From Orbicella franksi (Eukaryota), in the NCBI GenBank assembly GCA_964199315.1, contig OZ116699.1, forward strand, positions 29,946,001-30,010,000: a stretch of 64,000 bases of DNA. Reading direction: 5' to 3'. The notes under the pieces are model-generated. The model did no database searches, was not told where the DNA came from, and saw nothing but the letters and a program-made list of their open reading frames with translations. This document shows, one piece after another, positions 55,785 to 57,870 of this stretch (the stretch's first letter is position 1; every line of letters starts with the position of its first letter). The translations under genes were made by a program, and so were the position numbers.

Positions 55785-57870
55785 ATGATCGGGAAAGCCA
55801 GTCTCTGGTTTGGGTACTTTGTCCTCTGTACGATTATCTCGTGCACGATATCAACCCCTCCAGTCAGAGTTCAAGGTACTTATAACATTCTCAGAATATC
55901 TATCATTATTCGTTGTGATTTCAAGGCAAAGTGATTCTCTTCTTACTGTCCAAAGACAGTTCAATCTATATTATTGAGATATGCGAGAGAAATCCATTCA
56001 AGAGCAACTGTTAATACTTGTTAGTAGCGATATGCTCGATATTCTACGTACAATTAAGCGATTTACCATATTTCGTCGAACAGTACTGGTAACTCCTGAT
56101 AATTATTGTTATCATTCCCCTCAATAAAGAGCGATTACCGGTTATTTGAGATGAAAGTTACCTGGGGAAAAATCGTTTCGTCCGCTCACAATATCTTTTA
56201 TCCTTTAAAAGTAAGAGAGTATTCGTCTCACCACGGCGAATGCAGTTTACGCCACCAAGCAACTTAAAACAGGAGACAACTTCAATCTAACCTGCGTTCA
56301 CATGAGAATATTAACATAAATCAGTACAAACTGCCCAACGGTTTCTATCAGGAATAACATAACTTATCTTGTTAATACTTACAGAAGCAGTCAGTGCAAC
56401 GGGTTTTTCCTCATATTTTATATGAAATCACTTTTTTGATACTTTTTGTTTACAGATATATAATCGAAATTACAAAAAAATATATGACTCTCAACAATTA
56501 TTTTCGGAAACACTGTTTTCGCACTCATCTTCAACTATGGTGGATTTTATTGAGAAGAATGCATTGTCAAGTATCAAGTGACAAGATGAAAAAAGATAGT
56601 CTATGTTACTCAAACATGAGAACTTGCCAGTGAAACGCGACTATTTTTCTCTTCCGTGTTCTTGTGTGATAAAATATAATGTTCCAGAATAATGTTTAAC
56701 TCTGTTCTCATTTGAGGAACAGTTTCCTTAACCGCTTAAGTATTTCTTTCGACACTTTTTGGGTAGGAAATCCTTATCCGTTTTACCAAAGTCCTGATCC
56801 GGAAACTGGTGACTCAGAGGGACTGGAACTAGAACGACCAGAGTTTGAGAGAGCAGTTAAACGAAATCCAGCCCCGCCTGTAGAGTGCGTGCAATGTTGC
56901 AATAACTTGTGGTAAGTAAACAAGTAGCTTATTTCTTTCATTCTCTTTAATTATTACATGTTTCGTATCTCAAGCACAATACACAAGGATCAGCCTGACT
57001 GCAAGACTGAACAACTTAAAGAGTTATTTATTTGTGGTTTGATCACGCACTCTTCTGAATCTATCTTGAAACTATGATTTATAAGCCGTACTTAGACTGT
57101 ACTTGTCAGGCAGCAGGGTCAAATGATACATTGTAATTAGTAACACTGTGATATAATGCGTCCATTATACTTTCGCCCTGCATTATATTACCAACATTAA
57201 CGGCCTTTTCCGGTACAGTCTGTTTTGTTTATGTGGGTACAGTTAGTACTTTCGGAATTCTATGGTAGTTATTTATCTATCATTTAGAACCTTCGTATAT
57301 CCTATTCCAAAGACCTGACCTGTTGAAGCATTACCGTTTAGTTCTCAGTGCGTGGATCGGTCTGTGTGTCGAGCAAGTTTTCAGAACAGGCGCTAGCTGT
57401 AATCACTAGCTAACTTGAAATTTATGTAATTACATATTGATACGTACCATGCGAGTGAGGCAACTAAGATTTAGAAACTTGGTAGACAGAAGCTTATAAT
57501 TATGCTGTAAAATTATTTATTATCTATATGTTTTTATTGGAAGTAGAGGAAAAAACTCTAGCTTGTCTGCGATGTCTTGGCTATGTTTGCAAAGACCGGA
57601 ACATACGAGTTTCACTCCGTGTTTAAATTGGGGAGTTATTAAAAGCGATTTCTTCATCCTAAAATTCAGTCTATTTACGTTAGTTTTCATAGGACACTTA
57701 AGCGTCTTAGCAGAACATGGCTTATGTTTTTGTCAACGAGCTAACAAGCAACAGGCTATTTGTATTCAGGGTATTAATCTGAGCTAACGGTGTTCAATGT
57801 TGCTCTTTCCAGGTGCTCTTACGTCAACACTCGATGCCTTTGCACTCCACGGTGGAACATCGGCCCTTAA
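55785..57870 (+). CDS. Gene D: secreted six-cysteine peptide precursor (toxin/AMP-like), 97 aa
   Basis: Exons 55785-55875, 56767-56911, 57813-57870. Signal MIGKASLWFGYFVLCTIISCTIS, acidic pro-region ending KR, mature NPAPPVECVQCCNNLWCSYVNTRCLCTPRWNIGP. AATAAA near 57895. Confidence 0.75.

What the first reader, a model, noticed from the sequence alone, without database searches (positions are those of the whole stretch)
55785..57870. Unrecognised six-cysteine peptide precursor with framework C-x2-CC-x4-C-x6-C-x-C
It has the typical cnidarian toxin organisation: signal, acidic propeptide, KR, then a 34-aa mature peptide NPAPPVECVQCCNNLWCSYVNTRCLCTPRWNIGP. The spacing does not match the ShK/damicornin, SCRiP, defensin-like or Kunitz patterns I know. 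It is found only by splicing three exons, 3 kb downstream of the putative cnidocyst-wall cluster.
Basis: partly seen in the sequence, partly recalled or inferred. Interest (0 to 1): 0.72.

Follow-up and report, generated by a model that had tools for sequence, protein, structure and literature searches.

The report
Conserved stony-coral six-cysteine peptide gene
The three-exon gene is real: stony corals of both suborders keep it, in the same place, to make a small secreted peptide with three predicted disulfide bonds that matches no described family and whose function is still unknown.

Summary
Exons 55785-55875, 56767-56911 and 57813-57870 (+) join through GT..AG introns into a 97-aa open frame: signal peptide, acidic propeptide, KR, then the quoted 34-aa six-Cys peptide. 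It is not a chance assembly. Orthologues with the same three coding exons and intron phases occur in Porites (3 species), Oculina patagonica, Desmophyllum pertusum and at least five unnamed coral lineages. A Porites transcript contig is spliced at exactly these junctions. Synteny is conserved, and dN/dS is about 0.1-0.3. All 10 distinct mature peptides are exactly 34 residues, with 16 invariant positions. Pfam, NCBIfam, PDB sequences and the literature give no match, and public annotations say only hypothetical or unnamed protein. AlphaFold (pLDDT 72) predicts a short helix plus a beta-hairpin. The CxxxC...CxC spacing and the non-significant Foldseek neighbours (short scorpion K-channel toxins) suggest a mini cysteine-stabilised alpha/beta scaffold. 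The toxin reading is unproven. The gene is single-copy, very conserved, neutral to anionic, Lys-free in nine of ten peptide forms, and rarely seen as a transcript. I slightly favour an endogenous signalling peptide (about 0.4) over a venom or nematocyst peptide (about 0.3). It is a new peptide family of a known kind, of moderate interest.

The parts
55601..55735 (+). Conserved non-coding block just 5' of the gene (a proximal promoter, or an alternative or intronic promoter)
   Evidence: One search gives the alignment of six lineages. In one search, identity to the window is 0.90 for the close relative, 0.76 for Oculina, 0.69 for Desmophyllum and 0.56 for Porites, against about 0.50 for random intron segments. 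Only the core sub-blocks are conserved as far as Porites.
55610..55626 (+). Invariant core motif AATTTCCGGGTTTCCGC. It may be two ETS-like GGAA cores on the other strand; that reading is inference.
   Evidence: In one search the motif AATTTC-n(2-8)-GTTTCCGC occurs exactly once in every locus that holds the upstream region, always 172-186 nt before the ATG. It occurs once in the 64-kb window.
55721..55728 (+). TATA-like element CATAAAAA, 57 nt before the ATG
   Evidence: One search shows the sequence. In one search the aligned position is TATA-like in all six lineages. Its role as a promoter is inferred.
55785..55875 (+). Coding exon 1 (91 nt), holding the start codon, the signal peptide (about residues 1-23, 55785-55853) and the first propeptide residues. 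The donor is AAG|gtactt.
   Evidence: The orthologous exons are 88-91 nt with the same phase. AlphaFold gives a helix at residues 5-22. The cleavage site before [AT]-P-P is inferred from the -3/-1 rule and the alignment.
55876..56766 (+). Intron 1 (phase 1, GT..AG)
   Evidence: The position and phase are shared by all orthologues, and the intron is removed in the Porites transcript.
56767..56911 (+). Coding exon 2 (145 nt), holding the conserved GNP[YH]PFY motif, the acidic propeptide, KR and the first 15 whole residues of the mature peptide (codon 16, W, is split by intron 2). The donor is TG|gtaagt.
   Evidence: Exon-2 ORFs from other corals are P0002, P0005 and relatives.
56859..56864 (+). 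Codons of K62-R63, the predicted proprotein-convertase cleavage site
   Evidence: The sequence is. KR is invariant in all lineages. Cleavage itself is inferred.
56865..56911 (+). First part of the coding sequence for the mature 34-aa peptide (residues 64-78 whole, plus the first two bases of the W79 codon)
56912..57812 (+). Intron 2 (phase 2, GT..AG). It splits the Trp codon between Cys3 and Cys4.
   Evidence: The intron is shared by all orthologues and removed in the Porites transcript.
57813..57870 (+). Coding exon 3 (58 nt in every lineage), holding the last base of the W79 codon, residues 80-97 (mature residues 17-34, with Cys4-6 and the invariant WNIG), and the TAA stop
57895..57900 (+). 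AATAAA polyadenylation signal, 24 nt after the stop
   Evidence: Similarity to Oculina and Desmophyllum continues about 70-90 nt past the stop.

Best explanation
This is a genuine, single-copy gene, so far found only in stony corals (Scleractinia). It encodes a 97-aa secreted prepropeptide. Inferred: the signal peptide is removed before [AT]-P-P. The acidic propeptide, whose GNP[YH]PFY start is itself conserved, escorts the peptide through the regulated secretory pathway. A furin/PC-type convertase cuts after the invariant KR. The N-terminal X-Pro/X-Ala pairs (N-P/A, A-P) either protect the end or are trimmed. The released peptide folds into a short helix packed on a beta-hairpin. It is held by three disulfides of the cysteine-stabilised-helix type: Cys1 and Cys3 form a CxxxC on the helix, Cys5 and Cys6 form a CxC on the last strand, and Cys2 pairs with Cys4. 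It presents an invariant aromatic/hydrophobic face (W16, Y19, W30, I32). My commitment is that it acts outside the cell by binding a conserved protein partner of the coral itself, as a hormone-, neuropeptide- or paracrine-type ligand, rather than as a prey-directed toxin. My sub-confidences are: real spliced coding gene 0.97; secreted and KR-processed 0.8; helix plus hairpin scaffold 0.5; endogenous ligand 0.4.
For: Gene model. Orthologues: Porites evermanni, P. lobata and P. harrisoni (phmmer E 3.6e-24); Oculina patagonica and Desmophyllum pertusum (profile E about 1e-40); and unnamed lineages in Logan, ENA and JGI contigs. All have open three-exon models with phases 1 and 2 and GT..AG introns. 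Transcript: Logan contig L002 is intronless, and against the Porites genome it aligns as a 5'UTR exon plus the three coding exons with exact GT-AG junctions. Synteny: the window is colinear over 47-60 kb with Oculina and Desmophyllum and over 48.5-53.1 kb with Porites. Selection: dN/dS is 0.08-0.32 for all but the closest pair, and for the mature peptide between Oculina and Porites dN is 0.078 against dS 1.56. Mature peptide: there are 10 distinct forms, all 34 aa with no indels, 16 invariant positions and net charge -2 to +1. Single copy in the window and in each locus. Upstream motif at a fixed distance in every lineage. Fold: pLDDT is 71.7, with a helix at residues 6-11 and strands at 16-20 and 23-27. 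The best compact Foldseek neighbours are CS-alpha/beta scorpion peptides (TM 0.47-0.53, rmsd 1.2-1.7 A). For an endogenous ligand rather than venom or an antimicrobial peptide: it is single-copy with no tandem expansion, its length is fixed, it has no cationic character, and nine of the ten forms have no Lys at all. Only one transcript-derived copy is on record in the 15-billion-protein collection, against several genomic exon-2 ORFs, which hints at low or cell-restricted expression.
Against: There are no expression, peptide or receptor data for any member, so function rests on evolutionary pattern alone. Cnidarian toxins are also reported to evolve under purifying selection (my own knowledge), so low dN/dS does not exclude venom. 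The precursor layout (acidic propeptide ending in KR) is also that of nematocyst-delivered toxins and minicollagens, and the gene lies next to a NOWA-like nematocyst gene in conserved synteny. No relative was found outside Scleractinia, so no ancient peptide-receptor system is implied. The fold model has only moderate confidence from a 6-sequence alignment, and the Foldseek matches are not significant (E at least 5.7, probability at most 0.10). The disulfide pairing is inferred from spacing only.
Confidence: 0.4

Rival explanations
1. It is a venom or nematocyst peptide. The acidic, KR-terminated propeptide sorts it to the nematocyst or to a venom gland cell, and the three-disulfide alpha/beta peptide acts on an ion channel or receptor of prey or predators.
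For: The precursor layout is the one usual for anthozoan peptide toxins (established knowledge). The AlphaFold and Foldseek neighbours are short scorpion K-channel toxins, and a CxxxC...CxC spacing is present. The gene lies 3.25 kb downstream of a NOWA-like nematocyst-wall gene, and this adjacency is kept in Oculina, Desmophyllum and Porites.
Against: The gene is single-copy in every locus, with no tandem family. Its sequence and length are very conserved across both suborders. Net charge is -2 to +1, and nine of ten forms have no Lys, unlike pore-blocking CS-alpha/beta toxins. The Foldseek matches are not significant. Only one transcript-derived copy is in the protein collection. Microsynteny among scleractinians is generally well kept, so adjacency is weak evidence (my own knowledge).
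Confidence: 0.3
2. It is a structural or assembly component. Either it is a small Cys-rich peptide built into the nematocyst wall or matrix by disulfide exchange alongside the neighbouring NOWA/minicollagen-type proteins, or it is a secreted component of the skeletal organic matrix, which would fit its restriction to stony corals.
For: It has six Cys within 19 residues after a Pro-rich lead (NPAPP), and a KR propeptide as in minicollagens (established knowledge). The neighbouring genes carry true minicollagen-type Cys-rich domains. So far it is found only in Scleractinia.
Against: The Cys spacing is not the minicollagen Cx3Cx3Cx3Cx3CC pattern: the regex finds only the neighbours. It is not found in the annotated proteomes of other scleractinians in the collection searched. 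The invariant aromatic surface and fixed length suit a specific binding partner better than a bulk matrix role.
Confidence: 0.12
3. It is an antimicrobial peptide of the damicornin/AmAMP1 kind: a signal, an anionic propeptide, KR and a C-terminal disulfide-rich peptide, released from ectodermal granular cells.
For: The precursor layout is the same, and the family is restricted to corals (what is known of damicornin and AmAMP1 is my own knowledge).
Against: The mature peptides are neutral to anionic (-2 to +1) and not amphipathic-cationic. There is no ShK-type or other Pfam match at E up to 10. The conservation is stronger than is usual for immune effectors.
Confidence: 0.06
4. It is not a real feature: a chance open frame assembled by free choice of GT and AG sites.
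For: The model was found by eye by joining three short exons. No transcript of this species is on record.
Against: Sixteen loci from about ten lineages keep all exons open with identical phases. dN is much lower than dS. Beyond the closest relative, only the exons and the promoter block align, not the introns. An orthologous spliced transcript exists. Independent genome annotations call the same gene.
Confidence: 0.01

Closest known systems
Cysteine-stabilised alpha/beta (CS-alpha/beta) short peptides, e.g. the scorpion K-channel toxins P01 (1acw), tamapin, OSK1 and ADWX-1 returned by Foldseek
   Same: Both are about 30-35 residues with three disulfides. The prediction gives a short helix followed by a beta-hairpin, with a CxxxC on the helix and a CxC on the last strand. 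Superpositions give TM 0.47-0.53 and rmsd 1.2-1.7 A over 23-26 residues.
   Different: There is no sequence relationship (no Pfam or PDB sequence hit), and Foldseek E is at least 5.7. The third Cys pair sits elsewhere (a CC in the helix plus a Cys on the first hairpin strand, with no N-terminal strand Cys). Nine of the ten forms have no Lys, and the peptides are neutral to anionic. This is a different phylum. It is a resemblance in how the scaffold may be built, not membership.
Coral antimicrobial peptides damicornin and AmAMP1 (ShK-related; my own knowledge)
   Same: They are coral-restricted, with a signal, an anionic propeptide, a dibasic site and a C-terminal six-Cys peptide.
   Different: The Cys spacing differs and there is no ShK-domain match. 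Those peptides are cationic and this one is not.
Anthozoan peptide neurotoxin precursors (type I Na-channel toxins, and the BDS/APETx defensin-like toxins; my own knowledge)
   Same: They share the layout of signal, acidic propeptide ending in KR, then a short disulfide-rich peptide.
   Different: Their frameworks end in CC (C-C-C-C-CC) and they usually form multi-copy, lineage-variable families. There is no profile match here.
Toxin-like neuropeptides of sea anemones (e.g. the ShK-like peptides expressed in Nematostella neurons; my own knowledge)
   Same: The concept is the same: a disulfide-rich, toxin-shaped peptide used as an endogenous signal. This is what I think most likely here.
   Different: There is no sequence or framework similarity, and no expression data for the coral peptide.
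Minicollagen/NOWA Cys-rich domain
   Same: Both have six Cys in about 20 residues next to Pro-rich sequence and a KR propeptide. True examples lie in the neighbouring genes.
   Different: The spacing Cx3Cx3Cx3Cx3CC is not met, and there is no collagen or lectin part.

Membership tests
ShK domain (Pfam PF01549), including damicornin/AmAMP1-type coral peptides | A profile match to the ShK domain and its six-Cys spacing | tested here: not met
   hmmscan against Pfam-A at E up to 1 for the window protein and at E up to 10 for six family members returned no family.
Defensin-like sea-anemone toxins (BDS/APETx) and beta-defensin-type peptides | A profile match, and a framework ending in an adjacent CC (C-C-C-C-CC) | tested here: not met
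   There is no Pfam hit. The CC here is Cys2-Cys3, not Cys5-Cys6.
Kunitz/BPTI and insulin/relaxin-like peptides | A profile match to PF00014 or PF00049 | tested here: not met
   There is no Pfam hit and no PDB sequence hit.
SCRiP (small cysteine-rich proteins of corals) | Eight conserved Cys in the mature part, and sequence similarity to known SCRiPs | tested here: not met
   Six Cys are invariant in 10 forms. phmmer over 1.84 billion representatives and the profile searches returned only this family's own members. I did not align a SCRiP directly.
CS-alpha/beta superfamily (scorpion short toxins, invertebrate and plant defensins) | A sequence-profile match (e.g. Pfam Toxin_2, Defensin_2 or Gamma-thionin) | tested here: not met
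   No family was found at E up to 10.
CS-alpha/beta superfamily | A CxxxC on a helix and a CxC on a strand (the cysteine-stabilised helix motif) | tested here: met
   Cys1 and Cys3 are spaced i, i+4, and Cys5 and Cys6 are spaced j, j+2, in all 10 forms. AlphaFold puts Cys1 and Cys2 inside the helix (residues 6-11) with Cys3 at its C-terminal end, and Cys5 and Cys6 on strand 2.
CS-alpha/beta superfamily | A helix packed on an antiparallel sheet, with significant structural similarity | tested here: inconclusive
   The model has pLDDT 71.7 from six sequences. The best compact Foldseek hits are of this fold but have E 5.7-9.8 and probability at most 0.10.
CS-alpha/beta superfamily | Disulfide connectivity linking the helix CxxxC to the strand CxC | not testable with these tools
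   No coordinates or experimental disulfide map are available. The pairing 1-5, 2-4, 3-6 is inferred from the spacing.
Minicollagen-type Cys-rich domain | The spacing Cx3Cx3Cx3Cx3CC | tested here: not met
   A regex over all six frames finds four such domains, all in the neighbouring genes and none in this gene.
Convertase-processed secreted prepropeptide (a generic kind, not a homology family) | An N-terminal signal peptide, a propeptide, an invariant dibasic site and a C-terminal conserved peptide | tested here: met
   There is a hydrophobic N-terminus (AlphaFold helix at residues 5-22). KR is invariant, and the mature part has a fixed length while the propeptide carries indels. Actual cleavage is not testable here.

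The most novel reading that the evidence does not exclude
This is the founding member of a stony-coral-specific peptide-hormone or ligand family with a previously undescribed disulfide framework (a minimal cysteine-stabilised alpha/beta scaffold). It would be driven by a deeply conserved promoter element and would control some coral-specific physiology through an as yet unknown receptor.
Probability: 0.3. Interest if true: 0.7.

Novelty: new variant of a known kind. Interest (0 to 1): 0.45.

Why it matters
Few peptide signals or effectors specific to reef-building corals are known, and short multi-exon peptide genes are easily missed or left as hypothetical proteins. This one is kept almost unchanged in reef, temperate and deep-sea stony corals of both suborders. 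That argues for a function basic to coral biology. It offers a defined 34-residue molecule, a new cysteine framework and a conserved cis-element as entry points for finding the cell type and pathway it belongs to. If it proves to be a venom peptide instead, it would be a new anthozoan toxin scaffold.

Tried and rejected
(1) The word-indexed protein search with the single 97-aa sequence found nothing. The exhaustive phmmer search was needed to find relatives.

(2) Pfam, NCBIfam and PDB sequence searches gave no hits, both for single proteins and for profiles. The two PDB profile hits at E 0.6-0.75 (a conglutin and a light-harvesting protein) are noise.

(3) A paralogue in the window: the tblastn hit CSYERPHCLC at 59456-59485 is not a paralogue. 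It lies out of frame relative to the conserved signal-peptide exon of the downstream gene, so I rejected it as chance.

(4) The exon-2-only profile search for short ORFs added nothing new.

(5) Literature searches found no description of the family. I searched by run and contig accessions, protein accessions, locus tags, peptide motifs and topic. A coral-venom paper had no supplementary text held, and a hexacoral neuropeptide survey does not treat Cys-rich peptides.

(6) Species of the window: I could not name it. The exact look-up of a neighbouring ORF is not on record. Contigs 99% identical exist in JGI metagenomes Ga0126338 and Ga0126339.

I did not send it anywhere else afterwards.

(8) The first script for the promoter-block background timed out and was redone. 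The result tempered my first impression: beyond the suborder, only the core motifs stand above background, not the whole block.

(9) Rfam and tandem-repeat scans of 53-61 kb showed nothing relevant.

The comparisons in this report rest on tool hits, or are marked as my own knowledge and carry no letters.
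Full report
OBSERVATION. An ATG at 55785 lies in a good context (A at -3). Exon 1 is 55785-55875 (91 nt, donor AAG|gtactt). Exon 2 is 56767-56911 (145 nt, acceptor gggtag|, donor TG|gtaagt). Exon 3 is 57813-57870 (58 nt, acceptor tttccag|, TAA stop). The intron phases are 1 and 2. The joined frame is 294 nt, giving 97 aa. The protein has a hydrophobic N-terminus, a propeptide with 8 acidic and 5 basic residues, K62-R63, and then exactly the quoted 34-residue peptide with spacing C-x2-CC-x4-C-x6-C-x-C. AATAAA follows the stop by 24 nt (57895-57900), and a TATA-like CATAAAAA lies 57 nt before the ATG. The window has no N and no second copy of the gene.

IS IT REAL? Yes. An exhaustive phmmer search of 1.84 billion representative proteins gave five hits. 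The best is P0001 (92 aa, E 3.6e-24), which matches from the signal peptide to the last residue. It is an unnamed or uncharacterized protein of Porites evermanni, with near-identical entries in P. lobata and P. harrisoni. The other hits are exon-2 ORFs, or exon 1 with intron read-through, called on genomic contigs of other corals.

A profile of the family then found hypothetical proteins of Oculina patagonica (98 aa, 71% identity) and Desmophyllum pertusum (98 aa, 67% identity). A scan of JGI metagenome contigs added six loci. Two of them are 99% identical in DNA to window 51.8-57.9 kb, so they come from the same or a sibling species. The other four come from three further lineages.

In every locus that holds them, the three coding exons are open, with GT..AG introns at the same codon positions and phases. 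Exon lengths are 88-91, 133-154 and always 58 nt.

Cluster member P0008 comes from a 1028-nt Logan contig (L002) that carries the whole Porites coding sequence without introns. Against the P. evermanni genome it aligns as four blocks: a 5'UTR exon and the three coding exons. Every junction falls on a GT..AG boundary. No transcript of the window's own species is on record.

CONSTRAINT. Nei-Gojobori dN/dS is 0.08-0.32 for all pairs except the very close window/L003 pair, where it is 0.64 on few changes. In the mature peptide, Oculina against Porites gives dN 0.078 while dS is saturated at 1.56. Beyond the closest relative, only the exons, about 90 nt of 3'UTR and a block upstream of the ATG align in DNA. 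The bulk of the introns does not.

The ten distinct mature peptides are all exactly 34 residues. Sixteen positions are invariant: N1, A3, P4, P5, the six Cys, W16, Y19 and W30-N31-I32-G33. The propeptide, by contrast, carries indels. The first propeptide residues (G-N-P-[YH]-P-F-Y) are also conserved.

Oculina and Desmophyllum belong to suborder Vacatina and Porites to Refertina. The gene therefore predates the split of the two scleractinian suborders.

CONTEXT. The upstream neighbour on the same strand has a CAP/SCP exon (47212-47754), a C-type lectin exon (48454-48888), and two minicollagen-type Cys-rich domains (50732-50785 and 52421-52483) around Pro-rich and (Met-Pro)n sequence. Two more such units lie further upstream within 95-97% identical segmental duplications.

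The order NOWA-like gene, peptide gene, then a further small secreted-protein gene (59.46-60.88 kb) is kept in Oculina and Desmophyllum. The first two are also kept in Porites.

Upstream of the ATG, the motif AATTTCCG(n)GTTTCCGC occurs once per locus, always 172-186 nt before the start codon, in every lineage including Porites. It occurs only once in the 64-kb window. The wider block 55601-55735 is 69-76% identical between families of the same suborder, against a background of about 50%. At 56%, it is barely above background in Porites outside the core motifs. In the one Porites transcript, this block lies inside the 5'UTR intron, so it may be an alternative promoter there.

WHAT IT IS NOT. 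No member hits any Pfam-A model at E up to 10 or any NCBIfam model. Neither the protein nor a family profile hits any PDB sequence meaningfully. Searches of 8.4 million papers by accession, motif and topic found no description. The ShK, defensin-like, Kunitz, insulin, SCRiP and minicollagen-domain definitions are each not met (see the membership table). No relative was found outside Scleractinia. Within Scleractinia, the annotated hits are limited to Porites, Oculina and Desmophyllum. Short multi-exon genes are easily missed, and these tools cannot scan eukaryote genomes directly, so absence elsewhere is not shown.

STRUCTURE. AlphaFold on the whole precursor is poor (pLDDT 55). Even so, it places a helix and two strands in the mature part. 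On the mature peptide with the family alignment it gives pLDDT 71.7, with a helix at residues 6-11 and strands at 16-20 and 23-27.

Cys1 and Cys3 are spaced i, i+4, on the helix and at its C-terminal end. Cys5 and Cys6 are spaced j, j+2 on the last strand. This is the cysteine-stabilised-helix arrangement of CS-alpha/beta peptides (established knowledge). Cys2 and Cys4 would make the third bridge. Foldseek against the PDB gives nothing significant (best E 5.7). Its compact top hits are short scorpion K-channel toxins of that fold (TM 0.47-0.53, rmsd 1.2-1.7 A over 23-26 residues). I take this as a likely scaffold resemblance, not as membership.

HOW IT MOST LIKELY WORKS. Shown: the gene is a spliced, conserved, single-copy gene for a protein with a signal-like N-terminus, an invariant KR and a fixed-length Cys-rich C-terminal peptide. 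Inferred: the signal is cleaved before [AT]-P-P. The peptide travels through the regulated secretory pathway with the acidic propeptide. A convertase cleaves after KR. The N-terminal X-Pro/X-Ala pairs may be trimmed or may protect the end. Three disulfides lock a helix-hairpin fold. The peptide then binds a protein partner through the invariant aromatic face.

On the nature of that partner the evidence is indirect. For an endogenous ligand:
- The gene has strict single-copy orthology.
- The peptide has a fixed length and very low dN.
- Net charge is -2 to +1, and nine of the ten forms have no Lys.
- There is a deeply conserved cis-element.
- Only one transcript-derived copy is on record in a collection that includes assemblies of public sequencing runs.

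For a venom or nematocyst peptide:
- The precursor layout fits.
- The scaffold neighbours are toxins.
- The gene keeps its adjacency to a nematocyst-wall gene.

I put the endogenous ligand at about 0.4, a venom or nematocyst toxin at about 0.3, a structural role (nematocyst or skeleton) at about 0.12, an antimicrobial peptide at about 0.06, and an artefact at about 0.01.

NOVELTY AND VERDICT. Five coral genome annotations already contain this gene as a hypothetical protein. No family, framework or function has been described in anything I could search. It is a new sequence family and cysteine framework within a well-known kind of system, the convertase-processed disulfide-rich secreted peptides of cnidarians. 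The interest is moderate. The finding is solid, and the depth of conservation and the promoter motif are notable. But nothing yet shows an unusual mechanism.

Noticed in passing
window 47212-52531 (+): The upstream neighbour has the NOWA domain set. It has a CAP/SCP exon (47212-47754), a C-type lectin exon (48454-48888), and minicollagen-type Cys-rich domains at 50732-50785 and 52421-52483 flanking Pro-rich and (Met-Pro)n sequence. In Porites, Oculina and Desmophyllum the syntenic gene is annotated as one product of 2004, 993 and 719 aa respectively; all three run off the locus start.
   Followed up: partly
window 1082-9262 vs 23771-31909; 16958-23600 vs 31900-38570: Two large direct segmental duplications are 95-97% identical. 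They carry VWA and Laminin_G-like exons (5519-6821 and 28018-29322), C-type lectin exons (19308-21124 and 34240-36034), and a minicollagen-type Cys-rich domain (23538-23591 and 38509-38562). The nematocyst-type gene is therefore present in about three tandem units.
   Followed up: partly
window 38467-41067 (+): A long Pro-rich ORF (866 aa by the mechanical ORF call) starts with a minicollagen-type Cys-rich domain and contains a 126-nt tandem repeat (38979-39707; copies 81-91% identical). It has no Pfam match.
   Followed up: no
window 9151-10470 and 12064-15423 (+): Transposon sequence sits between the duplicated blocks. One ORF has an endonuclease/exonuclease/phosphatase domain of the non-LTR retrotransposon type. 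A 1119-aa ORF has protease, reverse transcriptase, RNase H and integrase domains of a Ty3/gypsy-type LTR retrotransposon, in a GC-rich (0.50) stretch. I only described these.
   Followed up: no
window 55601-55735, core 55610-55626 (+): A non-coding motif, AATTTCCG(n)GTTTCCGC, lies at a fixed 172-186 nt before the start codon in every lineage of both scleractinian suborders. TAATTAC-, TTTATTG- and TATA-like elements follow it. In the Porites transcript the motif lies within the 5'UTR intron.
   Followed up: yes
window about 59463-60882 (+): The downstream neighbour is another small secreted-protein gene. It has a signal-peptide exon starting near 59463, an acidic exon near 59753-59900 and a last exon ending near 60882. 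It is conserved with annotated genes of Oculina (171-aa product) and Desmophyllum (96-aa product). It has no similarity to the six-Cys peptide.
   Followed up: partly
L013 (JGI contig Ga0126339_10000704) against window 56865-56911: A contig 99% identical to the window carries Asp instead of Glu at mature-peptide position 7. Both near-identical contigs have Thr instead of Ile at residue 2 of the signal peptide. These are natural polymorphisms, or differences between sibling species.
   Followed up: no
L003 (ENA ERZ27245416 contig; about 80-87% identical to the window): The closest other species has the most divergent mature peptide of all: Pro2 to Leu, NNL to KKS, and the last Pro to Leu. dN/dS against the window is 0.64. 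This may reflect relaxed or altered constraint in that lineage, or noise from few changes.
   Followed up: no
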